64,000 nt of DNA from Isurus oxyrinchus (taxonomy: Eukaryota), in contig JANJGN010000009.1 in assembly GCA_026770705.1 (NCBI GenBank), positions 163,680,001 through 163,744,000 of the forward strand, written 5' to 3'. Positions within the stretch are counted from its first letter, which is position 1. Each line of letters starts with the position of its first letter. Position numbers and translations under genes: made by a program. This document shows positions 6,831-50,323 of the stretch, in pieces. The notes beneath the pieces are model-generated. The model ran no database searches and was not told the origin of the DNA. It was given only the letters and a program-made list of their open reading frames with translations.

Positions 6831-6996
6831 CCCACACACACAAACAAACACAGTCAAACATATGCACACACACAAATATCCTCAATAACCCCACAAACAC
6901 CGATACGCACAGACAGCAATATCGTCCATCACCCCACACACACACACAGAAACCTAAGCACACACAGTAATATCCTCAATCACCCCCACACATACA

Positions 6997-7030
<34 letters not shown>

Positions 7031-7449
7031 AACCTAAGCACACACAGTAATATCCTCAATCACCCCCACACACACACACACATACACACACACACACAAA
7101 CCTAAGCACACACAATAATATCCTCAATCACCCCCCCCACACACACACATACACACACACACACACAAACCTAAGCACACACAGTAATATCCTCAATCAC
7201 CCACACACACACACACACACATACACACACACATACACACACACACACACAAACATAAGCACACATAGTAATATCCTCAATCACCCCCACACACACACAC
7301 ACATTCACACACACACACACATACACACACACACACACAAACCTAAGCACACACAGTAATATCCTCAATCACCCCCACACACACACACATACACACACAC
7401 ACACACACAAACATAAGCACACACAGTAATATCCTCAATTACCACCCAC

Positions 7450-7490
<41 letters not shown>

Positions 7491-7550
7491 GCACACACAA
7501 ACATAAGCACACACACTAATATCCTCAATCACATACACACACACACAAAC
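6831..7550. repeat. Compound minisatellite aaac(c/a)taagcacacacagtaatatcctcaatcaccc+(CA)n
   Basis: About 10 units of 50-80 bp with a variable CA tract. Confidence 0.93.
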
Positions 7551-9624: not shown

Positions 9625-10778
9625 TAAGTTTTTAAACTTTATTAAGTGCAATTATAAGGACATGAAAGCTGGGATGGCTAAAGTGAATTGGCAAAATAGG
9701 TTAAGGGACAGGTCAATCGAGATGCAATGGCTCATATTTAAGGGGATATTTCAGAATGCACATTCCAACGAGTAAGAAAAAGTCTAAGTGACGGACACAC
9801 CATCCGTGGTTAACTTGAATGTTTAAACATAGTATCAAACTCAAAGGAAAAGTATATAATTCTGCAAAGACAGGTGGCAGGTCAGAAGATTGGACAGAAT
9901 AAAAGGAACAGAAAAGAATGACTAACAGACTAATAAGAAGGGAAAATTTAGTTTATGAGAGAATATAACAGGAATATAACAACAGATAGGAAGAGTCTTT
10001 ATAAGCACGTAAAAAAGAAAAGAGTGAACAAAGTGTGTGCTGGTCCTATAGAAGGTGAGCCTGGAGAATTGATAATGGAAAACAAGGAGATGGCAGATGA
10101 ATTGAACAGGCATTTTGCACCAGTCATATTGAAAATGTTAGAAGCTATTATTAAAGAAATTATAGCAGGACACTTGGATAAGGTCATGGTCATCAGGCAG
10201 AATCAACATGGTTTTGTGAAAGGGAAATCTGTTTATCCAGTTTTTTGGAGTTCTTTGAGGAAGTAACATGTGCTGTGGAGAAAGGGGATCTGGTGGATGT
10301 ACTGTACTGAGGTTTATAGAAGGCGTTTCATAAGTTATTGTGGAAAATAAAAGCTCATGGTATAGGGGGTCACATACTGGTATGGATAGAAAATTGTCTG
10401 GCTAACAAGAAACAGAGAGTAGGCATGAATGAGCCTTTGTTAGTTTGGCAAGATATAAGAGTGTTGTGGCACAGGGATCATTGCTGGGACCTCAACAGTT
10501 TGCACTTAATATCAACGACTTGGATGAAGGGTTTGAAGGGATGGTTTCTGAATTTGCTGATGACACAAAGATAGGTAGAAAGTAACTTGTGAGGGGGACA
10601 TAAGGAGGCTACAAAGAGATATAGATAGGTTTAGACAGTGGGCACTGATCTGGAAAATGGAGTATAATGTGGGAAAATGTAAAATTGTCCATTTTGGCAG
10701 GAAGAGTAAAAGAGAAAACAAAAACAGAATTACCTGGAAAAACTCAGCAGGTCTGGCAGCATCGGCGGAGAAGAAAAG

Positions 10779-10817
10779 AGTTGACGTTTCGAGTCCTCAT
10801 GACCCTTCGACAGAACT
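10779..10817 (-). ncRNA. Minimal type I hammerhead-ribozyme-like motif in the Penelope 3' end
   Basis: Minus strand agtt-CTGTCGA-a-gggtc-atgag-gactc-GAAA-c-GTC-aact: stem I agtt/aact, stem II gggtc/gactc, ACGT palindrome at stem III, GUC triplet. The core has U instead of A at position 6. Confidence 0.6.
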
Positions 10818-11207
10818 TGATTTCGAGTCCAAGAAAGAGTTGAAATATAAACTGATTTAAGGTGTGTGTGTGGGGGGCGGAGAGATAGAGAGAGAGAGAG
10901 GTGGCTGTGTAGACAAACAAGCAGTGATAGAAGCAGATCATCAAAAGATGTCAGCGACAATGGTACAATAGAACACATAGGTGTTAAAGTTAAAGTTGGT
11001 GATATTATCTAAACGAATGTGCTAATTAAGAATGGAAGGTAGGGCACTCAAGGTACAGCTCTAGTGGGGGTGGGGGGAGCATAAAAGATTTTAAAATATT
11101 TAAAAATAATGGAAATAGGTGGGAAAAGAAAAATCTATATAATTTATAGGGAAAAAAAAGGGGGAAAAAGGGGGAAACAGAAAGGGGGTGGGGATGGGGG
11201 AAGGAGC

Positions 11208-13340: not shown

Positions 13341-14987
13341 AATAGAATAAAAGAGAAGCATGTTATCTTAATGGTGAGAGATTGCAGAGCACTGAGGTGC
13401 AGAGGGATCTGGCTGTCCTAGTGCATGAATCATAAAAGGTTAGTATGGAGATACCGCAAGTAATTAGGAAAGCTAATAGAATGATTTCATTTATTGTGAG
13501 GGAGATTGAATTCAAAAGTAGAGAAGTTATTCTTCATCTGCATAGGGCACGAGTGAGACTACATTTGGAGGACTCTGTACAGTATTGGTCACAATATTTA
13601 AGGAAGGATGAAATGCATTGGAAGCAGTTCAGAGAAGGTTTACCAGGCTAATACCAGGCATGGGTGGATTGTCTAATGAGGAAAGGTTGGACAAACTAGG
13701 CTTCTATCTGCTGGAGTTTAGAAGAGTAAGAAGCGAATTGATTGAAACATATAAGTTCCTGAGGGGACTTGACAGGGTGAGTGCAGAGAGGATGTTTCCT
13801 CTTGTGGGAAAATGAGAGGTCACCAATTTAGAACAGAGATTAGGTGATTTTTTTTAACTCAGAGGCTCGTGAGTCTTTGGAAATCTCTTCCTGAAAAGGT
13901 GGTGAAGGGGAGGCTTCGAATATTTTTAAGGCAGAGGTGGAGTGGCACAAATCAGCAGTAACTTGTGGCGATTCACGATTCATTGGCTTTTCTCTTCATC
14001 GTCAAAAGTTGCTGATGATTTTCACATTAAAAGAGGTGTTTGTTGTTCATACCCCATTATATTTTCAGTAAGTTCTAGCCCATTGTTATAGAATTGATTT
14101 TCCAGGCAACTTTTCTGGGTGGAAACATTGAACTTTATTTACAAGACAGCAGCAGCAGCTACATGTGTGTATCTAACTCTATAACTAAAGGACAATTCCC
14201 CGTGGAGGTTCCCCATGCTGCAAATTGGTTGGTTTACACAGATCATGTTTCTTACAACAAAGGATTATTCTTAATGTTACAGTCCTACATTGATCAAAAC
14301 TATAATTATTACATTCCTCACCCTTTACCTTTTCTGTACATTTGTATTTACAAGGATGTTGATCTCATGACATTAAAATACTTCCACAGGTCATGAAATT
14401 ATAAGCTTGGTCTTTCAAGTGGTTCCATGTGGAACGTTTTAGTTTCATGACCTCAGATTCTCTGACAGGAACCACAGTCTCTGCAATAACATCAGGTACC
14501 TCATTAGGCACAGGCAGATCAGTGTCGTCCACTCCGACAGAGACATCGGGCATGACTATCCTTGGCTGTACAATTTTAAAAGGAACAACAGGTTCAACAA
14601 TGGCTACAGGTGGAAAATTATTTTGTGGGGTATCTCCATTCTTTTTAAATCAATCAGGAGCTTACCGGTGATCTACAAAGATTAGTAAATAAAACCAAAA
14701 TATTAAGAAATCTCTGTATTCAATTTGACAACTAAATTTCAGAAATGAAAAAAATACTTCTGTTCCTGTGGGGTTTGTGGAAATTGGGAGGGGGTTCCTG
14801 TTCTAAATCACTTCACAATTCAGTATAAATACTAGCTCAGCTCATCATTATCCATATGTTCTAACTTTTTAACATTCTTGTTTTCAGGATTTTATATCCT
14901 TTCAATGAAAATTAGTTTAGTTCTTTTGTTAAATATAACTGACAGAAGTTCAAGTTCTCAGGGGTCAGATTTCATCAGCTGCCTTAA

Positions 14988-15030
14988 TGTGGTTTCATGA
15001 CCTGGCTTCCTGCTATCTTCTTCCTCATTT
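14988..15030 (+). promoter_or_regulatory. Candidate leukocyte promoter module of gene A (RUNX + two ETS/PU.1-like sites)
   Basis: TGTGGTT 14988-14994, CTTCCTG 15006-15012 and CTTCCTCATTT 15020-15030 lie 100-140 bp upstream of the ATG. A TATAAATA lies at 14824-14831. Motif matches only. Confidence 0.4.
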
Positions 15031-15126
15031 AAATTCCTTGTATCATTTATATTAGACACATATTCGATGTGAGAAACAAGAGCTGAGTGTCTGGAAACAA
15101 GTTCTGTCCTGATCTTTGTGAACAAA

Positions 15127-15166
15127 ATGATGTGGATTTTGATTCTCCTCATTAGTTCTCTGCCCG
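15127..15166 (+). CDS. Gene A exon 1, signal peptide MMWILILLISSLP
   Basis: ATG at 15127, hydrophobic core, strong phase-1 donor G|GTGAGT at 15166/15167; joins in frame to VSGALW of the IgV exon. Identical in unit B. Confidence 0.88.
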
Positions 15167-18100
15167 GTGAGTGACAGACAGAGCTGGATGTTCCGATATT
15201 CTGAGTTGGTTTAACTCTCGTGCGCTGGTTATACAGGAGATGTTTAAATATTTGGAGACATGCAAAGGCACAAGAGAGGTCTTGGACACAGTGGGTAGCG
15301 TCACTGTATCTGAGCCAGAAGCTCTGTGTTTGAGTCCCACTTCTGTTCTTGTTGAGAATGGAAGGCGCGTTCTAACCAGGACCAACAGGTTGATTATCAA
15401 CCTGAAAATCTTCCAACAGACCGAAGGCTGGTGGGAAGAGGGTTTAAGATCCCAGTCCAACATGTTTGATGTGGAGTGGTGCCACTCATTCTGTTGTCTC
15501 CGGAGGTTAGTGACCTGTTCCGGGGAAAACAAGCTTTGGAAAGCAAAAGTAAACATGTGCTTTGTCTGCCGCATCCGTCTCTAGATGTGGGAAGTCTCCT
15601 AAGTCTAAAGGCACAAAATAGTCAGCAAAACCAAATGAGTAATAATTGTGAAGTATTTTATTACCCTGTGAATTAACTATCACACCATGGGAATAGTTAA
15701 CAAATAAACTGAACTGCATTATTAATTATGAATGATAAGTAAAGGAGAATTTAATTTTCAGAAAGCTATGCAAGCAACATTTTGAAAATGAAAACCTTTT
15801 TTAATTGGTAATTTTCAATATAATCTGATGTCCAGTATAGACTGAAGACTGCAGCGGTAATAATCCCACAAATAAAACATGTCCCAAGTTGGCAAATATT
15901 TCTGTTTTTGAAAGTACAGTTGATGAAATATTGTGTTATGAGGCTCTCTCAGTGACACTGTTCCTCACTGGTAGATGATTGGTCTACATCACTCTTCTCA
16001 TAAGTAGCCTTTTCTTGTTCATTCTTTAACTTTAAGAAACTAGATTTTGCTCATCACTCAGTATTGCCACCTCTCCATCATTTCGATGAATGTATTTTAT
16101 AACACACAATGTTAAACTCCCAGACCCATCTGCTCTTAACCACCTCCCCAAAATATTTTGCACCTCTAGCTGATCAATTTTATGCAGAATACTTGATGTA
16201 CTTATGGACAGGAAACTGAATCATGTTTCTGTCTGTTTGGCAATCTTCTTCTTTTCAATCCTTCCTCTTTCTGATCTGATCTCTTTCCCATTCCCTTTAC
16301 ATCTGTAACTTTCCCTGTATCTTTTTCCTTTTCTTCATTTCTCTCTAGCCATTTAATTATTTTCAATCTCTCTTTTGTTATTTTAGTGCAAACTCTTTCC
16401 CCACAGCATGAGTTTCTCTCCCAGCAAGGCCATTGGTCTCATGAATGTTCAAGTCAAGGCATCCAAATCCCTACCTCAGGAATCCATCCATACTGTAAGG
16501 CCACCTATCACACAACCTCGCAAACATTCAAGACCTTCAAATCCTACCTTTGGACATCCCTAACTCATTCAAGATCTGAACAACCCCTCCTGCAAGGACA
16601 CAAACCTCCTCTGCACCTCACCCACCTCAGATCAGAGCAGGGAACTGTCGGCTCCTGTGACCACCTCCACACTGCTCCCCAGCCGACTGCAAATCAGGCC
16701 TGTCAATCAGACTGGTTTCTGGCCGTGGAACCTCCTGATGATGTCAAACGCAGTCTAGGGTGAAACCTCAAAATATGAGGCAGAACCCCAATTTCCAGGT
16801 TCCCTCACTCTACCAGCCCCTGCCAATATGTCAAGAAAATGTCCCAATTATCTCACGAGTATATCATTGTCTGAGACGTGCTTTGGAACCACAGTGAGGC
16901 TCTGATAAGTGTCTATATGAATGATTACTCTCATCACAAACTTGATGGAATTTAACTCATTAAAATGCATCTGTTTGAATTAAGCAGTTATTTCCTGTTC
17001 AATTCCTGAAATGTTGTCTCCTCAGTTTCAGGTGCATTGTGGGCAAAAGAGAGAGTAACAGGAGTTGTGGGAAGAGCGATCACAATAGAATGTCACTATG
17101 ATGCACAGTGGTACAAGTCACATATAAAATATTGGTGTCGCGGCTGGACTCGCCAGTGTAATGTTGTAGCATCGACAAATTGGCGAAATGGAAGAATATC
17201 GGTCACAGATAACAAGTCACAAGGAATATTTATTGTTACTATGGAGAATCTTCACTCAGGAGATACAGGATGGTACAGCTGTGGTATTGAAGTAACTGGC
17301 CACAATCCAATGTTTAATGTAAAGCTACAAATATCTTACGGTACATTTCTTACTGTTTTTCTTTATTACTCTCGACTGAAATGTCTGCTCAATGTTTTAT
17401 CTGGGAGGAAACATGACAGCTCCGATATCCCGAGGCTCCACAGCAATGCAGAGTCTTAAACGTAAAGGGCAGTGGTCGGGAAATCCGACTCATGTTACCC
17501 AAACCCAATTCATGGCCTGTCCAACATGTCAGAATTGAACGTTACAAGTGAACTAAACGGAAATTGAGAAGTTGTTTTGATGGTAAAAGAAGCCTCTTTA
17601 TTAATTGTTGAGACATTGGGCTGGATATTCAGCCTCAAAGCGGGTAGGGGCAATTCGGAAAATTCCCCACTCGGCCTTGGAAGAAAGTGCCCACAAAGGT
17701 GGGATTCCCATTGCTGGGAGCTGTGCCCGGGCTGCAGTCTGGCCAGCCACACCAGGAAGAAATGCAGAGGCAGCCACAGGGGCTGCCGGCTGCGGAGACG
17801 GGCTGTTGAAAAGGCCCCTCCTTAATGCCCTTGGACTTTGTAACAGCTAAACTCAAAACACAAAGGCCCTTCACCCCTCACCCCTCACAGCCCACAAAGG
17901 GGGTGGATGTGAGGGGAAAATTTGTCATGAGGGGGCTTGGAGGTGGGTGGAAGTGTACAGCTTGAAGTCAGGAGCATGAGGGGGTATAAGGCGTGGGTAT
18001 AGCGATAGAGGGGGAACGAAGGGCCAAGCGGGTTGGATGGGGGTGTGACTTGACATAGCGGGCATGAGATGCACCTTTTGAACTTAGCTGTTAAAAGATC

Positions 18101-21100
18101 CCCTCATGCAGACCATTGTTTACAGCTCCTCTGAGGGGCTTTGGATTACGACTCATTCAAAACCTGGTCCGAGTCCATGAAAATTGCAGAGGAGTCGGAC
18201 GTCACTTTGGTCTGAAGGCTGCACAAAGCACAGGGTAGAGGCCCTGGACTGAGACACCAGCCTTTATCTTGTACAGAAAGTGTTCACATGTGAGTGACAT
18301 GAACATTGCTCATCAAAACAAGGAGCGATAGGCAGGGAGACATTCTTTGGAGGTTATTGACAATAATGAACAGTATGTACAAGTGATTAACACCCGTGCC
18401 CAGGACGTGAAACTACATCTCCTCAACCACGCGGTGTCTGGCGGCACCGTCGAGACCTTCTGTGCTCGGTGGGTGACCACGGGTGTTGGGGTCCTTTATC
18501 CAGCCTCTTAATCACATTTTGGTTTGATGTTGTAAGTGTCCTTTAAATCATGTCTTTGGTTTTGCAGTGACCCTAACTTAGGGGCTGCGTTTTATATTAT
18601 CCCTCATTTTGTTAATTTAGTTTATTGGGTTGGCTTTAAAAGAGCTACATCTTCTCAACTTTCCTAATCCTCCCGCTACATCTTGGTGCTCCGCAGACAT
18701 CCACAGTGGAGGTAAAGACAGTCTGCTGACTGCTATGCTCTGTCTGTGATAACTTTGGCGGGCGTCCTCTGGAGGCCTGAGGCCTGGAGGGCCCCGGCTT
18801 CCTTTCGAGGTCCTACTGTGTGGCATTAGCACCCTCCTTGTCCTGTGGACTGGGAGCTGTCAAGGTCACAGTAAGAGGGGAGTTACCAGGATGAATGGCC
18901 CCGGAGGGTACACATGTTGATCCTTCTCGCTATGGGTACCCAATGACCATTGGCTGAATCCTTGAGGAGCAGGTGTAGCTGGAGTGAGATCGAGCTGCCT
19001 GCACCCCTCTCGCATACACACTGTCAGGGGCCAACTATACATCAGCAATGGAGTTCAGCCCCGCAGCAGTGTAGGAACGATGCCCTGGACCAACGTCTCC
19101 ATTGCAGCTGCCATCCTACCAGTGTTGACCTCAGTGCATTGACATGCCGGCGCTATCACCTCAGAGGGCAGGCGGACGGACTCCTCCATTGTGCCTTGCA
19201 ATCTGAGGGGTGCAGCAGATATCCCTTCCTGATGTTCCCACGTTGGCCTTTCCAGTTCCTGCAACGGTGACATGACCAAATCCAGAAACGCGTCACCTGA
19301 CTCGACCTCAGCAAGTTTATGGCCTCCAGCTGCCCACTGAGTGCCGGACACCTGGGAAGCCCCTACCGCTGCCAGCTGTGGATCAGGCAGTGCGATTTGC
19401 TCACCAGCTGTGACCCTGAGTCTACTCTAAAGCTAGATCTCACCGAGGGGTGTGCCTCTGCGCTGGTGGAGGGTGTGGGTGAGGGCAGTGACGGTACATC
19501 AAGGAGGGTCCCTCCAGGTTCCTCTTCAGAGATTTCTTTGGGGATTACTTGGTGTCCCTGGGTCTCCATCGGCTGTTACCCAGATGTGCGTGTGGAAGCA
19601 AGTGGAAATATTTTGTGCATGGCAGTGGCCTGTGAAACAGGACACATCACTCACAGCATGGTTGTCTGATGGATGTTGCACTGCTGGACCCTCACTTGGC
19701 TGAGCACCGCCGACCTCACCGTCAGCACAGGATTGGTCCAGGCCGTTGCCGGCCAGCTGGATGGCTCTGTTTACAAAGTACTAGTACTGTTCAGGAACAT
19801 GATGTTCATATTTTCATACATGTCGCTGAATTTGTCAGTCACATTTACGCCTCTATTATCAACCAAAGAGCGGGATTGTCCCCGATTTGCACTAAGTGCG
19901 TTAGTGGGCGGGGGAATCGATGTTTTACCCACCGGCCACAATGGGGGGTTTTCAGGCTGCATCGTCCCAAACCCAACGCATTAGTTATGCATTCCCGGGA
20001 AACATACCATTTCCATGGTGAGTGGGATCTCATTCACCCCAAACACCATCATTTCACTGCTTCATCAGGCCCAGCACCATATGTAAAGTCCAGCCTCGTG
20101 CACACATCTCAGTGTTTCCAACCCAGGACCACTGCAGGGCAGATATCCCCAAGAGGCAAAAAGACTGTAGCTCCCAGGTTTAGTGAGCTGTCACTGCAAC
20201 ACATTGTGTACACTGTGGGGGCCCTGCTGTGATGTCCTCTACTCCCACTCTGGCTGCAGTATGGACAGCGCTGTGACCAACCAGGCCTGGGAGGCGGGGG
20301 CAGCAGTGGTATACCCACTGAATTTTATTAAGTTAACCCTCACTGTCAGATAATGTAGACAGTATGAAAAGTGTGGATGAGAAACCCTTAGAAACTGTCC
20401 TTGCTGGATGGAAACAAATACTGGAGAGATTGGAAATTTCTAAATGAAATGAGTGGATGCCTGATTGTTTTAGAGAATGAAATGCAGGTACAACAAATTT
20501 TTTAGGGATCTGAGGAGAGGGCTATCTTGCAATATGATGAAGTATAGAATATTGAGATTTTTAATTCAATTTACTTCACACTTTTTGGTCACCATATTAA
20601 CTGAAAATTTTATTTAAATGAGAGAAGGTCATCACCTAATCGTTTACTAATTGTGTTTAATTGTATGCAGTGGTGGCATTAATTGGTGATTCACTTGTGC
20701 ACCTATAAACAGATGCAGACTGAAACTGCGGGTGGTGGATTTAATTAGAATCACACAGTAAACAGCACTTTAAAACAGTTCCACAAGTCTTAACCTATCT
20801 AACCTCAGAGCTAATCTTTCTCTTTTCCGTTCAGCAACTAACACTATAGATTTAAAAAGCTATAGAAGTCCAATAATTTTACCACACAGTGCTTTCACAT
20901 TGGGGTGTCCACTGACAGCAACTGGGTCTTCAGATCTGGGCCTTGTTCACACTGTCTCCTGGGAATTCTGACCAGCTACCCTGCTGTCTTCAGGGAGATC
21001 TGGCCAACCATCCTGCTGTGTTCTGGGAGATCTAAGCAGCTACCCCCTCACATAGGCTTCAGTATTCCCTTAAATGTGTTTCTTCTCTTTCATCTCTCTT

Positions 21101-24100
21101 TGTCGTACCCAGTCTGTTCAGAAATGCTTTTATCCCAGGATTGATTAAATCAATCTTCACTTTAATTCTTAGACTTGTAAAAACAAACGTACCCTATCTT
21201 TATGTCACTTCATGACACCTTTTTACAACCTGCATATATCCCCCTTTGAACTAAAACAACTTAATTCAAACTATTCCTGTTATTGCTTCATGTACAAATC
21301 TGTTGAAGTTCTTTTGTGTTCATTAACATATCAAAACCACTTCTTACTGTTGACTTTTGACCCTATCCACTGATGAGGCAGTCCACGTCATGGAACCATA
21401 ACCTTAAATCTGGAGATAGGCTCGTCAGGGATGTCGGGAAGCACTTCTTCACGCAAAGTATAGCGGAAATCAGGAACACTCTCCTCAAAAAAGCTCTTTC
21501 GCTCAATTGAAAATTTCAAAACTGATTGACAGATTTTATCTGGTAGCAATATTCGGGTTATGGGACCCAGGTAGGTAAATGGACAGAAGATACTGGTCAG
21601 TTGGGATTTAATTGAATTGTGGAACAGGCTGAAGGGGCTGCATGTCCGAATCCCTTTTCCATGTTCTGGAGCCCCAGTTAATTTTTCAGTGGTCTGGGCC
21701 TTGTGAGTAACAATGTGCTGTGAAACAAGCTCACAAACAGTTAGCATTTCAAAGAGACACTTTCCAATCACCAGGCAAACTGTGACCTGTGTTGTTTCAG
21801 AGTACAGTTTGTGACAGTGAAAGCAGTGAAGGCCTGCCAAACCTCACTAAAAATGTTGGTGAAAGTGTCACTTTTCTCTGGCTAATCCCTTGATCAAAGA
21901 GGGAATTTTAATTCCCCTCCCCCATCCTGCATCGTGTTGAAGCATGATGGGATTTGCTGGATCCAGAACCTTCTCCAGCACGGCTTGTGATTCAGGAGAC
22001 ACACGAAAGCTTCACCCCCACCCCCAGGCAAATGTTTCATACAATTTCTCCCTCCCCATGATTGGCCAATCCTGCCCCAAGCAGCAAAGTCACCCTGACT
22101 CCCTCCTCGCTGCTGTGCTCCGAGGCAACATTCCCACCAATTTCCAAATTTTTACCATAACGTTCCTACTTGGAAACCAGCCAAACATTCAATCAGTGTG
22201 CAAGAATTCTGGTAAGATTTTGCTGCTAAATTCAGCACAAACTCAACATTCCTGGTATTTCCAGCTTTCTCACCACCCCACACACAGTCCCCCCTCTCGT
22301 CTCCACGTACCAGGGTTGAAGTGTTCTATCGCAGCATGCAGAGAACCAGAGCCAATCGCATTTACATTCTTATCCAAAGCCACAAAACATGTAACCGATA
22401 TCTGACAACATTTTGCCCTCATTTTACCCTTTGCTTTTCTAAGATTCTCTCCAACTAATTCACATTCAACTCACAAACAATGAAACAGCATTGGAGGCTC
22501 ACTACCAGCTACGAAGAGATATTGTTCACCATGATATTCATGTTAACATACTCTCAGTATCATAGCTGCTGTTCTGATCTGGAGACCTGATTTGTTCTGA
22601 TATAATGGCTGAAAGGGTAACTCAGGCCTCTAAGAGGATGGAGAGATATGGGGATGGATTTTTAAAAAGTATGCTATCAGGATTAGAGATGGGTGGGTGT
22701 GAAATTTGACACCGCTGGTCTCCATGCCAATTTACTGTTACAATCTCAAGCCCGAAACATTTAGAAAGCGAGCGGCTTGCAGTCAAGTGGTGGGCAGCTA
22801 ACTTAGGAAATAACATTTACCAAAGGGGCCAATTAAAGACCCATTCCTGCACCCACTGGGATTTCATTCAGCAATGATAGCAGACCACATTGCCCCTTCA
22901 GGATCATGGCCCGGCAGTTGCCGGGTTTTGAAACATAAAATAAACTTACCTGGACTTTCCCCTTGCTGTCTCCATGCTCAGGTCAGCAACTCCCACCTCA
23001 CCTGGTGAGGCCCTCTAGCATCAGGAGCCCGCCCACTGTCCCTGATTGGGTGGTGAGCCCAGTTCCAGGCTTTTGATTGGCTGGAACATTGAAAATTGTA
23101 TTGGGCATGCCTAAAGAATGGTGAATGGTGTCAGGACCTGAAACTATCTCCCATGTCCAGTTCGCAAACCCAAATTTAACATCCACCCCATAGAGTGGTA
23201 GATGTGTTGGTGAGATTCCAACATGACAGAGCCTGGCTGAGATGAAGTGCAAAGTTTGAAGAGTATTTGATTATTAAATGTTCAGTACTTGAATGTTTCT
23301 TTGTTTCCAACAGAACCCGTGTCTGTTCCTGTGCTTAGATTTTCATCACCACCACATGTCTCATGTTCTGGTGGTTCAGTGTCCGACTCCTGTGAGTCTG
23401 TCCAGGGATCCCTTCCCATTCAGTACACATGGTATGAAAAGACCCTGTCTGAAGATTCAAAGATCTCTGACAGCAATAAACTGGATCTACATTGTCAATC
23501 CTTCAAACAGCAACATCATCAATATTACTGTAGAGCCTCGAATAATCAGGGAGTAAAATCCAGTGACACTGTCACTGTTAACTTAACACTCATGAATGTA
23601 ACAACGAAAAGCTGCAGTTATGTGATACAAATTGGAAACATTGGTAAGTGTTACTTTCTACAAACAATGTGGTGAATGAATGTTTTAAATTCATGTCTAT
23701 CCAAACTGGTCACTGTTTCAGTTCCTTCAGTCAATCTGAGAAATTGCAACTGGCCAAATTCACTCTCTCTGGTTCCTCAAACATTCTGAACAAGGTCACT
23801 AAGTTGCATTTTTCATGAAAAATGGACAGGATCAGAAAATATCCCCAAAACATGCAAAAATATTGCCGAATCTCCAATAAACCCATCGAATCAAAATAGC
23901 ATTTGATTGACAGAGCTTTCATAAAGCAATTTGTCTATTTCCAGCAGATGGAATTGTGAAATGCAACCTCCAACTGTTGTGTCCTAGTTTGGGAAGGATA
24001 TCACTGATAGAATAGAGAAGAATTGAATTAAAATGAACCCTTGGATGAGAGGCTTTAGTCATGAGGAAAGTATCATCACAACTGAGGTGAATGACCAGCT

Positions 24101-27100
24101 GGAGGGCGTGGAAATTGTTAGAAATTTGGATAAGGTAACTCTAACTATTTCCACTAGTCAGTGAGTCAACAACAAGAGAGCATTAACTTTAAAATTATCA
24201 CTAAAAGGACAAAGGGAGAAATTTGGAGAATTTTATTGATGCAAACTGTTTTTAGGACATGGAATGCCCAACTGAAATAAGTTTACAAACAAATTTAATA
24301 ATAGATTTTAAAAGGGAAACAAATGTATGAGGGTGTGGGAAAAGGACAATGAAATGGAATTAAATGAGGAGATCATTCAGAGAACCAGCATTCGAGCGAT
24401 GGGCTGAATTCCCTCCCCTGTGTTGTAAAAATTCCATCACTCCAGACAAAATCTCAACTTATCCTGTATAAAAAATTAACTATTCCTTCCCCATAAAACA
24501 ATGACCCTGGTTCTGAAACAAGGAGGACTTTAGCCTATTTGAATGTAGCGGTTCAATTTTCTGCAGAGTGGGTGCAGCATGTTCACCGAGAAACACCAAC
24601 ATGGGCACAAAACAAAGAGAATCACATTTTCCCCTGAGCAGCAGGAGACAGGAATTTACATATGCAAATATATTGACTCTGGTCATGTGGTCTCTTGCCT
24701 CAGTTGTCAGGGAAGAAGGGTGGAATTTTACACCCCCATTGCGCCAGGGACTGGGCTGTAAAATGCAGCCAGCCATTCTAAACTCCATGCACTCCAGCAG
24801 GACCATAAAATCCCACTGTCACAAGCCTCAGACCAAAGGCTGTCAGCAGCAGGTAGAAATTACACCTGTAAACTGTGTTTGTACTGGAGTTGTCAGCAGG
24901 GACTCAGTCGCACTCTGACCTTTGATGACAGTATTTTGTAGGTTCAAGTTTCCCTTAAGAGTTAAAATTCAGGCTGATACCACTGTCCAGCACTGAGGTA
25001 GTGCTATACTGGTGGTGGTGCTGCTGTGTAGATGAGGTGTTAAACTGAGGATCCACATCCCCCTTAGGTAGATGTAAACAATTCCAGGGTATTATTCACA
25101 GAATAGGGAAGTTCTCCTGGTGTCCTTGAAGCCTTTATTCCTCAACCAATACACACAAATTGGGAGCAGGAGCAGGCTATTTGGTCTTTTGAGCCTGTTA
25201 ATGTCACTAAAAACAGATCATCTAGTGAATGTTTTACTGATGTTTGTGGGGCTTTGTTGTGTACGAATTAACTTTCACGTTTTCCGATATTAAAACTTTG
25301 GCTTTACTTCAGAAAAGTACTTAATAGGCTCTGAAGCACTTTGGGATATCTCAAGGTTGTGAAAGGTGATGAATCAACACAACTGATTTCTTACCTTTTG
25401 AAACAAACGACTTATTAAAATACATCTGAACCATATGCAAACTGGAGGGGGGGGGAGGGGGAGGGAGGAGCCAGTCCCAGCAGCAAGGTGGGTCATTATT
25501 TTTAAATGGACAGAAAATCACTGGCAGGTTTGAGACATTCAGCATCAGTGGGTGAAGATTCCCATCTTTACTGCAAGCTCAGAAAACTGCCCCCAAAGGA
25601 CAGAAAGTGACCATTGCCAGTATTTGGATGTGACTGTTTAATGTGTTCACATGAAATTCTTGTCAAGAAAGTGTATCTCTGATTGTAGTCCACCAACCTG
25701 AGCCCTTACCTGGCCCACTTCTAACTCTGTCCCACCAACTCTCAGATATAGGAAAGAAAGTGGAATTACCAGTAAAGATAGACCACCAGGTATCAGCAAA
25801 CTCTCCACTTGTGACCAGAGAGGGGTAAATTACACAGAAATCAATTCTACCAGCCAGTCTTTTCCTCAAGTAATGAGGTTCCATTTGACAATGATGCTCT
25901 CTCAGTTGAATACAAGTGAAAATGAGGTGAATCTCAATGTTATTCTCTTGTTTCAACAGGACCTGAGTATTGTTACGAAGCTTGTACAACAGTATCACCA
26001 ACTATCACACAACCCAGGAACGCAGTTGGGAATCCCAGAATTAGGACACATCCGCCATTTTTAAAGGGCTCTTGAATCAACCCAAGTTGGTGAAATCCAG
26101 GCCGTCACTTTGGTCTGAAGGCTGCACAAAGCACAGGGTAGAGGTCCTGGACTGAGACACCTGCCTTTATCTTGTACAGAAAGTTTTCACATGTGAGTGA
26201 CATGAACATTGCTCATCAAAACAAGGAGCGATAGGCAGGGAGACATTCTTTGGAGTTTATTGACAATAATGAACAGTATGTACAAGTGATTAACACCCGT
26301 GCCCAGGACGTGAAACTACATCTCCTCAACCAGGCGGTGTCTGGCGGCACCGTCGAGACCTTCTGTGCTCGGTGGGTGACCATGGGGGGTTGGGATGCTT
26401 TATCCACCCTCTTAATCACACTTTAGTTTGATGTTGTAAGTTTCCTTTAAATCCTGTCTTTGGTTTTGCAGTGACCCTAACTTAGGGGCTGCGTTTTATT
26501 TTGTCCCTCATTTTGTTAATTTAGTTTATTTGGTTGACTTTAAAAGAGCTACATCTTCTCAACTTTCCTAATCCTCCCGCTACATCTTGGTGCTGCACAG
26601 ACATCCACAGTGGAGGTAAAGACAGTCTGCTGACTGCTATGCTCTGTCTGTGATAACTTTGGCGGGCGTCCTCTGGAGGCCTGAGGCCTGGAGGGCCCCG
26701 GCTTCCTTTCGAGGTCCTACTGTGTGGCATTAGCACCCTCCTTGTCCTGTGGACTTGGAGCTGTCAAGGTCACAGTAAGAGTGGAGTTACCAGGATGAAT
26801 GGCCCCAGAGGGTACACATGTTGATCCTTCTCGCTATGGGTACCCAAGGGCCCGTGTCTGAATTCTTGAGGAGCAGGGGTAGCTGGAGTGAGATCGAGCT
26901 GCCCGCACCCCTCTCACATACACACTGTCAGGGGCCAACTATGCATCAGCAATGGAGTTCAACCCCACAGCAGTGTAGGAACGGTGCCCTGGACCAACGT
27001 CTCCATGGCACCTGCCATCCTACCAGTGTTGACCTTGGTGCAATGACATGCCAGCGCTATCACCTCAGACTGCAAGTGGACGGATTCCTCCATATTAACT

Positions 27101-30100
27101 GAAAATTTTATTTAAAAAGAGAGAAGGTCACCATCTAATCCTTTATTAACTGTGTTTAATTGTATGCAGTGGTAGCATTAAACAGATGTCTTCAGGTCTG
27201 GGCCTTGTACACACTGTCTCCTGGGAGTTCTGACCAGCTACCCTGCTGTCTTCAGGGAGATCTGGCCAACCATTCTGCTGTGTTCTGGGAGATCTAAGCA
27301 GCTACCCCCTCACATAGGCTTCAGTATTCCCTTAAATGTGTTTCTTCTCTTTCATCTCTCTTTGTTGAAACCAGTCTGTACAGAAATGCTTTTTTCCCAG
27401 GATTGATTAAATCAATCTTTACCTCTTAAACTTGTAAAAACAAACTTACCCTATCTTTATGTCAATTCCTTACACCTTTTTACAACCTGCATAAAGCTCC
27501 CTTTGAACTAAAACAACTCAATTCAAACTATTCCTGTTATTGCTTCATGAACTAATCTGTTGAAGTTCTTTTTTGTTCATTAACATATCAAAACAACTTC
27601 TTACTGTTGACTTTTGACCCTACCCACTGATGAAGCAGTCCACGTCATGGAACCATAACCTTAAATCTGGAGATAGGCTCGTTAGGGATGTCAGGAATCA
27701 CTTCTTCACGCAAAGTATAGTGGAAATCAGGAACACTCTCCTCAAAAAAGCTCTTGAACTTAAATGAAAATTTCAAAACTGATTGACAGATTTTATCTGG
27801 TAGCAATATTCGGGTTATGGGACCCAGGTAGGTAAATGGACAGAAGATACTGGTCAGTTGGGATTTAATTGAATTGTGGAACAGGCTGAAGGGGCTGCAT
27901 GTCCGAATCCCTTTTCCATGTTCTGGAGCCCCAGTTAATTTTTCAGTGGTCTGGGCCTTGTGAGTAACAATGTGCTGTGAAACAAGCTCACAAACAGTTA
28001 GCATTTCAAAGAGACACTTTCCAATCACCAGGCAAACTGTGACCTGTGTTGTGTCAGAGGACAGTTTGTGACAGTGAAAGCAGTGAAGGCCTGCCAAACC
28101 TCATTAAAAATATTGGTGAAAGTGTCACTTTTCTCTGGTTAATCCCTTGACCAAAGAGGGAATTTTAATTCCCCTCCCCCATCCTGAATCCAGTTGAAGC
28201 ATGATGGGATTTGCTGGATCCAGAACCTTCTCCAGCACGGCTTGTGATCCAGGAGACACACGAAAGCTTCACCCCCACCCCCAGGCAAATGTTTTATACA
28301 ATTTCTCCCTCCCCATGATTGGCCAATCCTGCCCCAAGCAGCAAAGTCACCCTGACTCCCTCCTCGCTGCTGTGCTCCGAGGCAACATTCCCACCAATTT
28401 CTCCCATGTCCAGTTCCCAAACCCAAATTTAACATCCACCCCATAGAGTGGTAGATGTGTTGGTGAGATTCCAACATGGCAGAGCCTGGCTGAGATGAAG
28501 TGCAAAGTTTGAAGAGTATTTGATTATTAAATGTTCAGTATCTGAATGTTTCTTTCTTTCCAACAGAACCCGTGTCTGTTCCTGTGCTTAGATTTTCATC
28601 ACCAGCAAATGTCTCATGTTCTGGGGGTTCAGTGTCCGTCTCCTGTGAGTCTGTCCAGGGATCCCTTCCCATTCAGTACACATGGTATGAAAAGACCCTG
28701 TCTGAAGATTCAAAGATCTCTGACACCAATAAACTGGATCTACATTGTCAATCCTTCAAACAGCAACATCATCAATATTACTGCACAGCCTCAAATAATC
28801 AGGGAGTAAAATCCAGTGACACTGTCACTGTTAACTCAACACTCATGAATGTAACAACGAAAAGCTGCAGTTATGTGATACAAATTGGAAACATTGGTAA
28901 GTGTTACTTTCTACAAACAACGTGGCGAATGAATGTTTTAAATTCATGTCTATCCAAACTGGTCACTGGTTCAGTTCCTTCAGTTTATCTGAGAAATTGC
29001 AACTGGCCAAATTCACTCTCTCTGGTTCCTCAAACATTCTGAACAAGGTCACTAAGTTGCATTTTTCATGAAAAATGGACAGGATCAGAAAATATCCCCA
29101 AAACATGCAAAAATATTGCAGAATCTCCAACAAACCCATCGAATCAAAATAGCATTTGATTGACAGAGCTTTCATAAAGCAATTTGTCTATTTCCAGCAG
29201 ATAGAATTGTGAAATGCAACCTCCAACTGTTGTGTCCTAGTTTGGGAAGGATATCACTGATAGAATAGAGAAGAATTGAATTAAAATGAACCCTTGGATG
29301 AGAGGCTTTAGTCATGAGGAAAGTATCATCACAACTGAGGTGAATGACCAGCTGGAGGACGTGGAAATTGTTAGAAATTTGGATAAGGTAACTCTAACTA
29401 TTTCCACTAGTCAGTGAGTCAACAACAAGAGAGCATTAACTTTAAAATTATCACTAAAAGGACAAAGGGAGAAATTTGGAGAATTTTATTGATGCAAACT
29501 GTTTTTAGGACATGGAATGCCCAACTGAAATAAGTTTACAAACAAATTTAATAATAGATTTTAAAAGGGAAACAAATGTATGAGGGTGTGGGAAAAGGAC
29601 AATGAAATGGAATTAAATGAGGAGATCATTCAGAGAACCAGCATTGGAGCGATGGGCTGAATTCCCTCCCCATGTTGTAAAAATTCCATCATTCCAGACA
29701 AAATCTCAAATTATCCTGTATAAAAAATTAACTATTCCCTCCCCATAAAACAATGACCCTGGTTCTGAAACAAGGAGGACTTTAGCCTATTTGAATGTAG
29801 CGGTTCAATTTTCTGCAGAGTGGGTGCAGCATGTTCACCGAGAAACACCAACATGGGCACAAAACAAAGAGAATCACATTTTCCCCTGAGCAGCAGGAGA
29901 CAGGAATTTACATATGCAAATATATTGACTCTGGTCATGTGGTCTCTTGCCTCAGTTGTCAGGGAAGAAGGGTGGAATTTTACACCCCCATTGCGCCAGG
30001 GACTGGGCTGTAAAATGCAGCCAGCCATTCTAAACTCCATGCACTCCAGCAGGACCATAAAATCCCACTGTCACAAGCCTCAGACCAAAGGCTGTCAGCA

Positions 30101-33100
30101 GCAGGTAGAAATTACACCTGTAAACTGTGTTTGTACTGGAGTTGTCAGCAGGGACTCAGTCGCACTCTGACCTTTGATGACAGTCTTTTTTAGGTTCAAG
30201 TTCCCCTTAAGAGTTAAAATTCAAGCTGATACCACTGTCCAGCACTGAGGTAGTGCTATACTGGTGGTGGTGCTGCTGTGTAGATGAGGTGTTAAACTGA
30301 GGATCCACATCCCCCTTAGGTAGATGTAAACAATTCCAGGGTATTATTCACAGAATAGGGAAGTTCTCCTGGTGTCCTTGACGCCTTTATTCCTCAACCA
30401 ATACACACAAATTGGGAGCAGGAGCAGGCCACTTGGTCTTTTGAGCCTGTTAATGTCACTACAAAACAGATCATCTAGTGAATGTTTTACTGATGTTTGT
30501 GGGGCTTTGCTGTGTACGAATTAACTTCCACGTTTCCTGATATTAAAACTTTGGCTTTATTTCAAAAAAGTACTTCATAGGCTCTGAAGCACTTTGGGAT
30601 ATCCCAAGGTTGTGAATGGTGATGAATCAACACACATTGTTTCTTACATTTTGAAACAAACGATTCATTAAAATACATCTGAACCAATTATCTGAGTGCA
30701 AACTGGAGGGGGGTAAGGGGAGGGAGGAGCCAGTCCCAGCAGCAAGGTGGGTCATTATAATTAAATGTTCAGAAAATCACTGGCAGGTTTGAGACATTCA
30801 TGGTCAGTGGGTGAAGATTCTCATCTTTACTGCAAGCTCAGAAAACTGTCCCCAAAGGGCAGAAAGTGACCATTGCCAGTATTAAGATGTGACTGTTTAA
30901 TGTGTTCACATGAAATTCATGTCAAGAAAGTGTATCTCTGGATTGTAGTCCACCAACGTGAGCCCTTAACTGGCCCACTTCTAACTCTGTCCCACCAACT
31001 CTCAGATATAGGAAAGAAAGTGGAATTACCAGTAAAGATAGGTCACCACCAGGTATCAGCAAACTCTCCACTTGTGACCAGAGAGGGGTAAATTACACAG
31101 AAATCAATTCTACCAGCCAGGCATTTCCTCAATTAATGAGGTTCCATTTGACAATGATGCTCTCTCAGTTGACTACAAGTGAAAATGAGGTGAATCTGAC
31201 TGTTATTCCCTTGTTTCAACAGGACCGGAGTATTTTTGTGAAGATTCTGCAACAGTATCACCAACTATACATTTGACAAGTACAGATATAATTTCCACTA
31301 CCAGTCGATCCACACCTTCAGATCCCGAAAATCCTGAAAGGTACAATGTTCTCATGGATTGGTACTGCTTCCATATGTGAGAGATACGATTGGCCAAAGG
31401 AGTGAAAGTTGTTCATTAATTTGGAAAGTAGCTCATCAGAATGGAAATGGTGGCTGGGTTTATATCATGCTGTTGTGTTAGCTTCTTAATGAGGGTGCAT
31501 TTTTCTGTTGGAAAATACAAGCAAGGAGTGAGCTTTTCCATTGTGTTGCCGCTCAGATGGTGTTTTTAGCCTTATTCACCTTAATTACTTCACCGCTAAG
31601 GTAACCTCACAGTGTGTGAGGAGTTGTACTTGTCAAACTTACCTTGCTGCTGTCTACACTGACAGAGTACTTGTATTTGGGCTGATGAAAAGGAAGAATT
31701 AGCGTGAGCTGCTGAATGTTTCCAGAATCTTCTGTTTTCCATTCATATTTCTAGCACATGCAGTGCTCTTACTTTTATCCAGATTATTGTCAATGATTTA
31801 AAAAGTATTGAAAGTCTATGGTCTGAATTTTCCGCTCGGCGGGGGTGGGGCTGGGGTAGAGCGGGAGCGAGCACGGGCAGCTGTGGACCCGTTCACCATC
31901 CACCATCGGGTTTTTGACGCCATTTTGCGCGGGCGGCCAATTTAGGCCATCCCAGCGTATTTCCCGACTCCCGAGGATAGCGGGAGTGGGCGAGCAGCGG
32001 GGGGTGTGCACAGACAACCGAGTCCAATGGTGACCCAGCGGCCTGTTTAAATGAAGGCCTGGCAGCCTGTTCCAGCTGCTCACAATGGCCAGTGCAAAGA
32101 ATTTTCACTTACAATTTAGCTTTGTATTACAGTTAGACATTATGGACATGCTAAAGAAATTTGCTTCGTTTGATTTTTATCTAATGATCATGAAGTTGAT
32201 AAGTAGAACTTTAGTTGATTCTTTCAGCTAAAGTCCCTTGTCTACTTTATGTTGCTGCAAAAAATTACAGTGTAAAGCGGAGAGTCATGTTTCAAAAATG
32301 AAACAGTCTCATTTCATTTAAATGGTTTGATATTTCTTCTCTTTTGCTCAGTTGCATTATCTGGGATGTGATACGCTGGGTGCTCTTTACTCTCCTGGTG
32401 ATTTGTGCTGTTTCGGGCACATGGTGTACGAGAAAATCTAAGGTGAGAGTTATGGACTGTATAAGAATCATTATGGGCAGTTTGCAATGTTATGATGTGG
32501 CAGATGATGTGTGTCAGGCAGACCAAATCCACGAGTGAAACTTGGTCGAGCTGTCACAACGGTTTTGCAATTTATATTTATTATGAGATGCATGCACTGA
32601 ATTCAGACACCATAAGTCTACCAAACTTTTAGAGATTTAAAAAATATATCGTTAAATATATTTATTAGCAAAAGATAGATTTCAATTACATACATAAGTC
32701 TACTAATTTCTTCTATAATAACTCGTAAAATTCCTAATTAGCCTCACTCCCAGTTACACCTCCTTTAAGGCAACTGTACAAAGAATAGATATTAGGTTTC
32801 AAGCAGATCCAGCAAATTGACACAATGATCTAGACAGTGGAATTCCAAATGGCTTTCACCAGCTTCAGTTTCGTTAGACAGCAGGCTTATGCACAAATGC
32901 TGGAGGCTTCATTAAGGCTACTTCAAACACATCTGTTAGGTCTCATATGGACTTCTCCTGACACATAGCCTCATTCTCCTTTATATATGTTTCCCTCTAT
33001 TTAACATGTAAACCCTATTGTTTCAGATACCTTTGAAACTGTGTCTTCCTCACAATGTAAAAACTTTCATGTCGATACTATATATTGTCAGTAACCTTTG

Positions 33101-44861: not shown

Positions 44862-44908
<47 letters not shown>

Positions 44909-50283: not shown

Positions 50284-50323
50284 ATGATGTGGATTTTGAT
50301 TCTCCTCATTAGTTCTCTGCCCG
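50284..50323 (+). CDS. Gene B exon 1, signal peptide
   Basis: Identical to 15127-15166, donor GTGAGT. Confidence 0.88.

What the first reader, a model, noticed from the sequence alone, without database searches (positions are those of the whole stretch)
17026..17340. IgV exons differ almost only by replacement changes in loop regions while adjacent introns are identical
A versus B (52183-52497): 10 substitutions, 9 non-synonymous and 1 synonymous, giving 8 aa changes. They are QW>WR after the B-strand Cys (CDR1-like), WR>RP (CDR2-like), EN>KD, and V>A plus N>D after the F-strand Cys (CDR3-like). By eye, the 225 bp upstream and 120 bp downstream show no differences. An exon more divergent than its introns suggests diversifying selection on ligand binding, or exon-targeted gene conversion.
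Basis: partly seen in the sequence, partly recalled or inferred. Interest (0 to 1): 0.8.

Follow-up and report, generated by a model that had tools for sequence, protein, structure and literature searches.

The report
Shark immune-receptor duplicates differing in binding loops
Two neighbouring copies of a shark immune-receptor gene differ in their ligand-binding domain mostly by amino-acid changes in the surface loops, a pattern that is common in such gene families and is only weakly supported statistically for this one pair.

Summary
Exon A (17026-17340) and exon B (52183-52497) differ at 10 bases: 9 replacement and 1 silent, giving 8 residue changes. The flanks are identical for 257 bp upstream and 120 bp downstream.

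The exon is a V-set domain like those of pIgR and CD300. It belongs to two tandem genes of the elasmobranch MDIR family; the closest relative is a great white shark protein, 85% identical. A spliced RNA contig confirms the exon borders.

- **Exon versus duplicon:** the exon (3.2%) is not more divergent than the 12.7 kb duplicon (2.3%; p=0.25). 21% of 315-bp windows hold 10 or more changes.
- **Whole-exon pN/pS:** the ratio is 2.46 but not significant (p=0.70).
- **C2 exon:** it has more changes than the V exon, 12 in all (7 replacement, 5 silent).
- **Clean flanks:** they are two of several homogenised patches along the duplicon.
- **Loop codons:** replacement change runs at 5.1 times the non-coding rate (p=0.0005 if the changes are independent, 0.05 if they are four events).
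- **Family variation:** the changed sites are variable across the family (p about 0.01).

Selection, short-tract conversion and relaxed constraint cannot be separated here. The scan found the same pattern 202 kb away (note s1-866035). This is a new member of a known kind.

The parts
15130..15166 (+). Leader (signal peptide) exon of gene A. It is phase 1, with donor G|GTGAGT. The ATG at 15127 is probably not used.
   Evidence: One search found a hydrophobic ORF with a strong donor, identical in copy B. The X17 RNA-type contig joins 15071-15165 to 17025-17340. 15128 T>C is the only letter seen in runs X1, X5 and X18. Relatives start with the same leader sequence.
17026..17340 (+). V-set (pIgR/CD300-like) exon of gene A, phase 1-1. 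This is the finding.
   Evidence: The borders are confirmed by the spliced contig.
16769..17025 (.). Upstream intron stretch identical between A and B. With the first 80 bp of the exon it forms the longest difference-free tract (338 bp).
17341..17460 (.). Downstream intron stretch identical between A and B.
23314..23643 (+). First C2-type Ig exon of gene A (inferred borders: acceptor cag, donor G|GTAAGT; phase 1-1).
   Evidence: It is 60-67% identical to the C2 domains of skate MDIR2/3/5 and 85% to P0224.
28567..28896 (+). Second C2 exon of gene A, made by an internal duplication of about 5.25 kb.
31223..31340 (+). Stalk exon of gene A (inferred borders).
   Evidence: Its translation matches the stalk of the great white shark protein P0224.
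32352..32442 (+). Transmembrane exon of gene A, with Asp and Arg in the helix (activating type). The borders are inferred.
   Evidence: The helix is nearly the same as in P0006 of Hemiscyllium ocellatum.
50287..50323 (+). Leader exon of gene B, identical to A.
52183..52497 (+). V-set exon of gene B.
58470..58799 (+). Single C2 exon of gene B.
13344..26004 (.). Longest collinear block of the tandem duplication (partner 48499-61171), 97.7% identical. It was used as the neutral yardstick.

Best explanation
A and B are the V exons of two young tandem duplicates of a shark MDIR-type receptor gene. Each gene has a leader, one pIgR/CD300-like V domain, one or two C2 domains, a stalk and a transmembrane helix with charged residues, so it is an activating form. 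Since the duplication, the ligand-facing loops of the V domain have taken up amino-acid changes faster than the surrounding non-coding DNA, while the framework changed more slowly. The likely cause is diversifying selection on ligand or pathogen recognition. It would act on changes that arise by point mutation or are copied in as very short patches from other family members. The difference-free intron flanks are patches homogenised between A and B, like several others along the duplicon. Shown here: the differences, the domain type, family membership, splicing, the loop positions and the loop excess. Inferred: selection as the cause, the ligand-binding role of the loops, and activating signalling.
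For: Loop codons 23-33, 50-54 and 87-95 carry 7 replacement changes in 61 replacement sites (0.115). That is 5.1 times the non-coding rate of 0.0226, with p=4.5e-4 if the changes are independent. Framework codons run at 0.011, or 0.48 times that rate. The 8 changed positions have a mean family entropy of 2.05 bits against 1.25 for the other 96 positions (188 unique V domains); permutation gives p=0.010, or 0.016 when adjacency is kept. Among 135 pairs of V-C2 units whose C2 domains are at least 90% identical, the V domain is the less identical one in 97%. Other copies hit the same codons again. One X1 DNA contig has a 3-base deletion inside codons 27-28. Another has T at 17245 and G at 17247, a third state at codons 73-74. 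The closest relative, P0224, carries A's residues in CDR1 and CDR2 but a different and longer CDR3. A spliced RNA-type contig shows that a copy of this gene is expressed. Five difference-free tracts of 277 bp or more occurred in 0 of 20,000 uniform simulations.
Against: Whole-exon pN/pS of 2.46 is not significant (Fisher p=0.70). Nine or more of 10 changes being replacement has p=0.23 under neutrality. pN against the intron rate gives p=0.11. The exon as a whole is no more divergent than the duplicon (p=0.25), and 21% of windows hold 10 or more changes. The changes fall into four tight clusters; if each cluster is one event, the loop excess drops to p=0.05. The loop borders were set after seeing the data. 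Concentration in variable loops is also what relaxed constraint gives. The C2 exon has 12 changes, 7 replacement and 5 silent. The V-versus-C2 pairs mix species, isoforms and paralogues, are not independent, and compare proteins only. The table of other letters was cut (191 rows not shown). In the runs laid, B's letters within the exon are therefore confirmed only at 17247.
Confidence: 0.45

Rival explanations
1. Patchy gene conversion alone. The duplicon is a mosaic of stretches homogenised between A and B and stretches that are not, or that were overwritten from third paralogues. The core of the V exon (17106-17304) is an unhomogenised or imported patch lying between two homogenised patches. 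The replacement bias only reflects what the donor paralogues look like.
For: Five difference-free tracts of 277 bp or more, four of them away from this exon, occurred in 0 of 20,000 uniform simulations. Counts per 315-bp window are overdispersed, with variance 15.9 against mean 7.1. Six of the 10 changes, including the only silent one, lie within 80 bp (17106-17185). The residues there that differ from the great white shark relative P0224 are B's. Other copies are about 8% divergent over the same part of the exon (11 other letters plus a 3-base deletion in 140 bp), so a short imported tract would bring this many changes. The followed-up scan note s1-866035 reports a divergent island over a V exon plus 338 bp of intron in the same gene cluster.
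Against: No donor was seen. Among the 259 family proteins held (none from this genome) B's CDR2 motif is absent, and B's CDR1 motif occurs once, in a distant protein. The framework between the clusters is nearly clean, so several very short tracts would be needed rather than one. Conversion does not explain why paralogues differ mainly in loops in the first place.
Confidence: 0.27
2. Neutral drift with purifying selection on the framework, and no positive selection. The ten changes are what a 2-3% diverged duplicate is expected to carry. Replacement changes survive only where the fold tolerates them (the loops and the E-F turn), and the clean flanks are chance.
For: Exon against duplicon gives p=0.25, pN/pS p=0.70, and 9 of 10 replacement p=0.23. 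The longest clean tract alone has p=0.11. The changed sites are tolerant sites in the family. Close pairs of substitutions are common outside the exon too: 50 of 279 gaps are 5 bp or less.
Against: Drift cannot push the loop replacement rate above the neutral rate, yet it is 5.1 times the non-coding rate. The same codons differ again in further copies. The local contrast has p=0.0006 by gap shuffling, although it was chosen post hoc.
Confidence: 0.22
3. Assembly artefact. A and B are the two haplotypes of one locus wrongly placed in tandem, so the differences are allelic polymorphism.
For: The two units are 95-99% identical, with N gaps at matching places. In run X1, contigs specific to one version have depth about 70 and shared ones about 140-160. 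This fits two alleles as well as it fits two loci.
Against: The units differ in structure: there is an extra internal duplication of about 5.25 kb, and a stretch at 10716-13344 has no counterpart in B. Run X1 holds at least one more V-exon version besides the exact A version. Scan notes report further units 15 kb upstream and 202 kb downstream. Related sharks and rays have many tandem family members, some annotated as fused multi-V models.
Confidence: 0.06

Closest known systems
Modular domain immune-type receptors (MDIR) of cartilaginous fish. Skate MDIR2, 3 and 5 appear as UniRef names. Passages of PMC3031540 describe them; the original paper (Cannon et al. 2006, Immunogenetics 58:362) is cited there but is not held, so I did not read it.
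   Same: The leader, the V domain (55-61% identity to the V domains of MDIR2/3/5) and the C2 domain (56-67%) match in the same order. Both are multigene families with activating and inhibitory forms, and both occur in cartilaginous fish (PMC3031540 passages).
   Different: This is a lamniform shark copy with a charged transmembrane helix and a short tail, and with one or two C2 exons. I found no published test of loop diversification for MDIRs in the held library (searches; 1 relevant paper).
CD300 / CMRF35-like molecules of mammals
   Same: The V domain is of the same type: PDB matches to CLM-1/CD300 have E 7e-17 to 2e-12. Both have paired activating and inhibitory genes in clusters. [quoted passage not shown]
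   Different: CD300 proteins have a single V domain and no C2 domain. Lipid binding, as known for CD300 (recalled), is untested here.
Polymeric immunoglobulin receptor (pIgR) domain 1
   Same: This is the best structural relative: 5d4k and 7jg2 domain hits have E about 1e-9 to 1e-10 per domain. It shares the extra C-C' disulfide pattern and a helical CDR1 capped by a conserved lysine (PMC4786434 passages). In pIgR D1, CDR1 to CDR3 make the ligand contacts.
   Different: pIgR has two to five such V-type domains in a row and no C2 domain. It is a single-copy transport receptor, not a diversified multigene family.
Other rapidly diversifying germline receptor families with variable V or Ig domains (KIR, NITR, NILT, DICP), recalled. 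NITR and NILT are named in PMC3031540 passages.
   Same: They are tandem multigene clusters of paired activating and inhibitory forms. The ligand-binding domain diverges faster than the rest, and gene conversion and positive selection are both invoked.
   Different: They have different domain types and occur in different lineages. None is a sequence relative at family level.

Membership tests
MDIR (modular domain immune-type receptors) | Sequence similarity to the named skate MDIR proteins over both Ig domains, in the same order | tested here: met
   V exon A is 61% identical to P0230 (MDIR2) over 106 columns and 55-59% to the V domains of MDIR3 and MDIR5. The C2 exon is 56-67% identical (E 1e-34 to 1e-44). 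The names come from UniRef.
MDIR (modular domain immune-type receptors) | N-terminal Ig domain of the CD300/TREM/pIgR type | tested here: met
   Pfam V-set E 1e-9. PDB hits are pIgR, CLM-1/CD300 and TREM2. The feature is as stated in PMC3031540 passages.
MDIR (modular domain immune-type receptors) | Multigene family with activating (charged transmembrane helix) and inhibitory (ITIM tail) members | tested here: met
   The window has two tandem genes whose transmembrane exon (32352-32442) carries Asp and Arg. Relatives P0066, P0071 and P0230 have uncharged helices and long tails with tyrosine motifs. Signalling itself cannot be tested here.
MDIR (modular domain immune-type receptors) | Found in cartilaginous fish | tested here: met
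   All named close relatives are sharks, rays, skates or a chimaera. The closest is from Carcharodon carcharias.
CD300 / CMRF35-like | Ectodomain made of a single V domain only | tested here: not met
   C2 exons follow the V exon. Relatives have V plus C2.
pIgR | Two or more tandem pIgR-type V domains in one chain, and binding of polymeric Ig | tested here: not met
   tblastn finds only one V exon per unit in the window. Ig binding cannot be tested here.
Genes under diversifying selection (dN/dS above 1) | Replacement rate significantly above the silent or neutral rate | tested here: inconclusive
   The whole exon gives pN/pS 2.46, p=0.70. Loop codons run at 5.1 times the non-coding rate, with p=4.5e-4 or 0.05 depending on whether clustered changes count singly. 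Family-wide codon models were not possible without DNA of other copies.
Gene-conversion tract | A donor copy carrying the same patch, with tract ends marked by linked sites | tested here: inconclusive
   No donor is present in the window. B's CDR2 motif is absent and B's CDR1 motif occurs once among the 259 family proteins held, none of which is from this genome. Mosaic clean tracts are present.

The most novel reading that the evidence does not exclude
The MDIR cluster of this shark may run a germline loop-rewriting process. Patches of only a few bases would be copied among the many V exons, so the same CDR codons (27-28, 52-53, also 73-74) are rewritten again and again, while the framework and nearby intron are kept uniform by longer homogenising tracts. 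This would give a non-rearranging receptor family a combinatorial loop repertoire.
Probability: 0.12. Interest if true: 0.55.

Novelty: new member of a known kind. Interest (0 to 1): 0.3.

Why it matters
If loop-directed diversification is real here, the shark MDIR cluster would be one more germline-encoded, fast-evolving recognition system in the oldest jawed vertebrates. Pairs such as A and B, which differ by 8 residues, would be convenient natural loop-swap reagents for finding the still unknown MDIR ligands. As it stands, the pair is an ordinary example of how tandem immune-receptor genes diverge. Its main value is as one data point for a cluster-wide test.

Tried and rejected
**Searches that gave nothing or could not run**
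- The word-based protein search with the V exon alone found nothing. The tool only sees proteins of 57-182 aa for a query of this length.
- The AlphaFold model built from the two-row alignment A1 was poor (mean pLDDT 59.6). I did not use it for mapping or for fold searches. The loops were placed by alignment to human pIgR D1 instead.
- I intended to fetch DNA of paralogues in other sharks, starting with P0006, for dN/dS and conversion tests.
- The third word search, with P0224, returned no protein of the window's own species.
- Two older papers by Cannon et al. are not held.
- I did not scan the metagenome, bacterial-genome or viral collections. They cannot be expected to hold shark loci.

**Readings considered and rejected**
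- AID-like targeted mutation: 1 of 10 exon changes lies in a WRC/GYW motif, against 82 of 279 outside the exon. Tandem clustering is not clearly exon-specific either: gaps of 3 bp or less number 3 of 9 inside against 39 of 279 outside, p=0.13.
- Constraint on the intron flanks as splicing signals: similar clean tracts lie far from exons.
- The CDR1 change as a codon shift (one codon lost, one gained): the A/B alignment needs no gap, so I left it as three substitutions.

**Limits of the evidence**
- laid only Logan contigs, not raw reads. Its table of other letters was cut to 40 rows (191 not shown). It therefore cannot confirm or deny nine of B's ten letters or the copy number.
- I did not ask for supplementary files. 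Supplements of PMC12447643 and PMC4786434 might hold site lists or alignments that bear on the comparison.
Full report
**What is at the coordinates**

Exon A (17026-17340) and exon B (52183-52497) are 315 bp each and align without gaps. They differ at ten positions: 17106, 17107, 17109, 17174, 17181, 17185, 17244, 17247, 17293 and 17304. With codons starting at 17028, nine changes are replacement and one is silent (17174). The flanks are identical from 16769 to 17025 (257 bp) and from 17341 to 17460 (120 bp).

**What the exon is**

- **Domain type.** Both exons match the Pfam V-set domain (E 1e-9 and 1.3e-10). The nearest solved structures are domains of the polymeric immunoglobulin receptor, then CD300/CMRF35-like molecules and TREM2.
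- **Copy number in the window.** tblastn finds only these two copies.
- **Gene model.** The parts, with inferred borders except where stated, are:
  - a leader exon at 15130-15166;
  - the V exon;
  - a C2-type Ig exon at 23314-23643, with a second copy at 28567-28896 made by an internal duplication of about 5.25 kb in gene A;
  - a stalk exon at 31223-31340;
  - a transmembrane exon at 32352-32442 whose helix holds an Asp and an Arg.
- **Gene B.** It has the same parts, with one C2 exon at 58470-58799.
- **Expression and splicing.** A contig of run X17, which the tool guesses to be RNA, lies on 15071-15165 and then directly on 17025-17340, and its remaining 706 letters lie beyond the stretch laid. 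This confirms the leader-to-V splice and the donor at 17340. It also shows that a copy is transcribed. That contig has 5 other letters in the V exon, so it is neither the reference A nor the reference B.

**Which family**

- **Relatives found.** A full HMMER scan with the V exon found 2,290 proteins at E of 0.001 or less. The best single-domain matches are 60-70% identical.
- **Who they are.** Cluster look-up and two word searches with relatives show that they are all from sharks, rays, skates and a chimaera.
- **How they are named.** The source names vary: 'polymeric immunoglobulin receptor-like', 'CMRF35-like molecule 8', 'Fc receptor-like protein 5' or 'uncharacterized'. They include the clearnose skate proteins that UniRef names Modular domain immune-type receptor 2, 3 and 5.
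- **Identity to the skate MDIRs.** V exon A is 55-61% identical to the V domains of those three proteins. The C2 exon is 56-67% identical to their C2 domains.
- **Closest protein.** It is P0224 of Carcharodon carcharias: 85% identical in V and 85% in C2, with a matching stalk. The window is therefore from a lamniform shark or a close relative. No tool names the species.
- **Literature.** Passages of PMC3031540 describe MDIRs as multigene activating/inhibitory receptors of skate and zebrafish with CD300-, TREM- and pIgR-like domains. The original description (Cannon et al. 2006) is cited there but is not held, so I did not read it.
- **Search method.** I searched exon by exon and left out the step of joining exons into a spliced protein.

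**Is the exon more divergent than its surroundings?**

A and B lie in a tandem duplication of about 35 kb. The longest collinear block, 13344-26004 against 48499-61171, has 289 substitutions in 12,658 aligned bases, or 2.28%.

- **Exon against duplicon.** The exon has 10 in 315, or 3.2%. Against the rest of the block this is not significant (Fisher p=0.25).
- **Windows of the same size.** 21% of all 315-bp windows in the block hold ten or more substitutions.
- **The C2 exon.** It has 12 substitutions between copy a and B (7 replacement, 5 silent) and 7 between copy b and B (5 and 2).

What is unusual is the cleanliness of the flanks, not the exon.

- **The tract next to the exon.** The tract 16768-17106 (338 bp) is the longest difference-free tract in the block. 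As a longest tract it is not exceptional (p=0.11 under uniform placement).
- **The other clean tracts.** The block holds five such tracts of 277 bp or more, which none of 20,000 uniform simulations reached. The other four lie at 14220-14516, 18484-18764, 21526-21803 and 23733-24046.
- **The local contrast.** Shuffling the gaps gives p=0.0006 for 'flanks empty and 10 or more in the exon' at this fixed place. The flank lengths were chosen after the fact, however. With a looser contrast score, 0.5% of positions do as well.

I read this as a mosaic of patches homogenised between A and B. Two of these patches happen to bracket the core of the V exon.

**Is there evidence for selection?**

- **Whole exon.** There are 67 silent and 245 replacement sites, with 1 and 9 changes. 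This gives pN/pS of 2.46 with Fisher p=0.70. The chance of nine or more replacement changes among ten neutral ones is 0.23. pN against the non-coding rate gives p=0.11. The pair alone has no power.
- **Placing the loops.** I split the exon by structure, using the alignment to human pIgR D1 and the residue landmarks in passages of PMC4786434. Those landmarks are Tyr24-Asn30 and Arg34 in CDR1, Glu53 at the centre of the two-residue CDR2, and Asn97 and Arg99-Leu101 in CDR3. I took codons 23-33, 50-54 and 87-95 as loop codons.
- **Loops against framework.** The loop codons hold 7 replacement changes in 61 replacement sites (0.115). That is 5.1 times the non-coding rate. The 79 framework codons hold 2 in 184 (0.011), or 0.48 times that rate.
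- **Significance of the loop excess.** It has p=4.5e-4 if the seven changes are independent. It falls to p=0.05 if the four tight clusters are single events.
- **The EN>KD change.** It lies at the end of strand E and the E-F turn, not in a CDR.

**Family-level context (proteins only)**

- **Variability at the changed sites.** From the 259 proteins fetched I cut out 197 V domains that cover nearly the whole exon at 50% identity or more. Of these, 188 are unique. The eight A/B positions have a mean column entropy of 2.05 bits against 1.25 for the other 96. All eight rank in the more variable half, and position 27 is an insertion present in only 15% of domains. Permutation gives p=0.010 for eight independent sites, and 0.016 for three adjacent pairs plus two singles.
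- **Recurrent states.** All four combinations at residues 73-74 recur in the family: EN 50, ED 61, KD 11 and KN 11 occurrences.
- **V against C2.** I compared 169 V-C2 units plus the three window units, giving 14,700 pairs. Of these, 135 pairs have C2 domains at least 90% identical, and in 97% of them the V domain is the less identical one. These pairs mix species, isoforms and paralogues and are not independent. The result could reflect selection on V, weaker constraint on V, or homogenisation of C2.
- **How this pair compares.** For A and B themselves, V (92% identical) and C2 (about 94-95%) are similar, so this pair is a mild case.

**Direction of change and further copies**

- **Comparison with P0224.** P0224 shares A's residues at 27-28, 52-53 and 73, but B's residue at 74. 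This suggests that most CDR1 and CDR2 changes arose on B's side and that A's residue at 74 arose on A's side. The reads agree on the last point: 17247 A>G is the only letter seen at that place in all four runs laid.
- **Support for A's letters.** In DNA run X1, one contig matches A exactly over 17077-17225, which supports A's letters at six of the ten sites.
- **Other versions in X1.** Another X1 contig over 17077-17216 has 11 other letters plus a 3-base deletion inside codons 27-28. Another carries T at 17245 and G at 17247, a third state at codons 73-74.
- **Other versions in X18.** Run X18, guessed to be RNA and from the second organism label, has three V-exon contigs with 2, 6 and 12 other letters.
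- **What this shows.** More versions of this exon exist, and the same codons vary again.
- **Limits.** All four runs were Logan contigs rather than raw reads. The table of other letters was cut (191 rows not shown). B's other nine letters, the depth and the copy number therefore could not be checked.

**Mechanism and rivals**

- **Best reading (0.45).** The ligand-facing loops of a young pair of activating MDIR genes are diverging faster than neutral, under diversifying selection. Raw material comes from point mutation or very short copied patches. The clean flanks are homogenised patches.
- **Conversion alone (0.27).** This fits the mosaic and the 80-bp cluster of six changes on B's side. No donor was seen, and several tiny tracts would be needed.
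- **Drift with framework constraint (0.22).** This fits every whole-exon test but not the five-fold loop excess.
- **Haplotype misassembly (0.06).** This is unlikely given the structural differences between the units and the extra versions found in one individual.
- **AID-type targeted mutation.** It is not supported: 1 of 10 exon changes lies in WRC/GYW against 82 of 279 outside.

**Comparison and novelty**

The genes are new members of the MDIR family, which is related to CD300 and pIgR. They are not members of those two families, because they carry C2 domains and only one V domain. Faster divergence of the ligand-binding domain, with conversion and selection intertwined, is the usual picture for clustered paired receptors. 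For CD300A/C in primates, conversion is reported in the abstract of PMC12447643.

The scan had already met the same pattern in this genome. Note s1-866035, 202 kb downstream and followed up, calls it MDIR and judges it 'patchy copying plus moderate selection', an ordinary pattern. Note s1-865416 makes the same claim for a V exon 15 kb upstream. In the held library I found one paper that mentions MDIRs and none that tests their loops for selection.

**Verdict**

This is a new member of a known kind, with interest of about 0.3.

Noticed in passing
window 15127-15129: The first of two adjacent ATG codons of the leader reads ACG (15128 T>C) in every contig of runs X1, X5 and X18 that covers it. 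The second ATG (15130) is therefore the likely start, as in the relatives.
   Followed up: partly
window 18052-20415: Contig depth rises from about 100 to between 10,000 and 500,000 in the DNA runs, with many internal joints. This is a very high-copy repeat inside the intron after the V exon. Part of it (18645-19772) is 77% identical to 845-1989 and 38431-39583.
   Followed up: no
window 23147-26009 and 28400-31271: An internal duplication of about 5.25 kb (96.6% identical) gives gene A a second C2 exon that gene B lacks. B's single C2 region aligns with both copies.
   Followed up: partly
window 10716-13344: This stretch has no counterpart in unit B. Long ORFs around 10000-10860 and 11700-13250 look like a retroelement insertion.
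   Followed up: no
window 4370-5131, 6833-7551, 41907-42913, 44202-44989: Staggered self-matches at 82-89% identity mark tandem arrays at matching places in both units, next to the two N gaps (6498-6830 and 44024-44190).
   Followed up: no
proteins P0224, P0178, P0164, P0181, P0239, P0242, P0248 (lamniform sharks): The core of the C2 domain is almost invariant among lamniform family members, while their V domains differ widely, including CDR length changes. C2 may be homogenised or strongly constrained.
   Followed up: partly
window 16092-17669, run X1: At many places where A and B differ outside the exon, run X1 shows only B's letter at about double depth. A's non-coding letters may be private to the reference individual or haplotype.
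   Followed up: no
proteins P0001, P0006, P0164, P0178: Several annotated shark proteins of this family hold two to five V-C2 units, and P0006 holds two complete receptors in a row. These look like tandem genes fused by automatic annotation.
   Followed up: no
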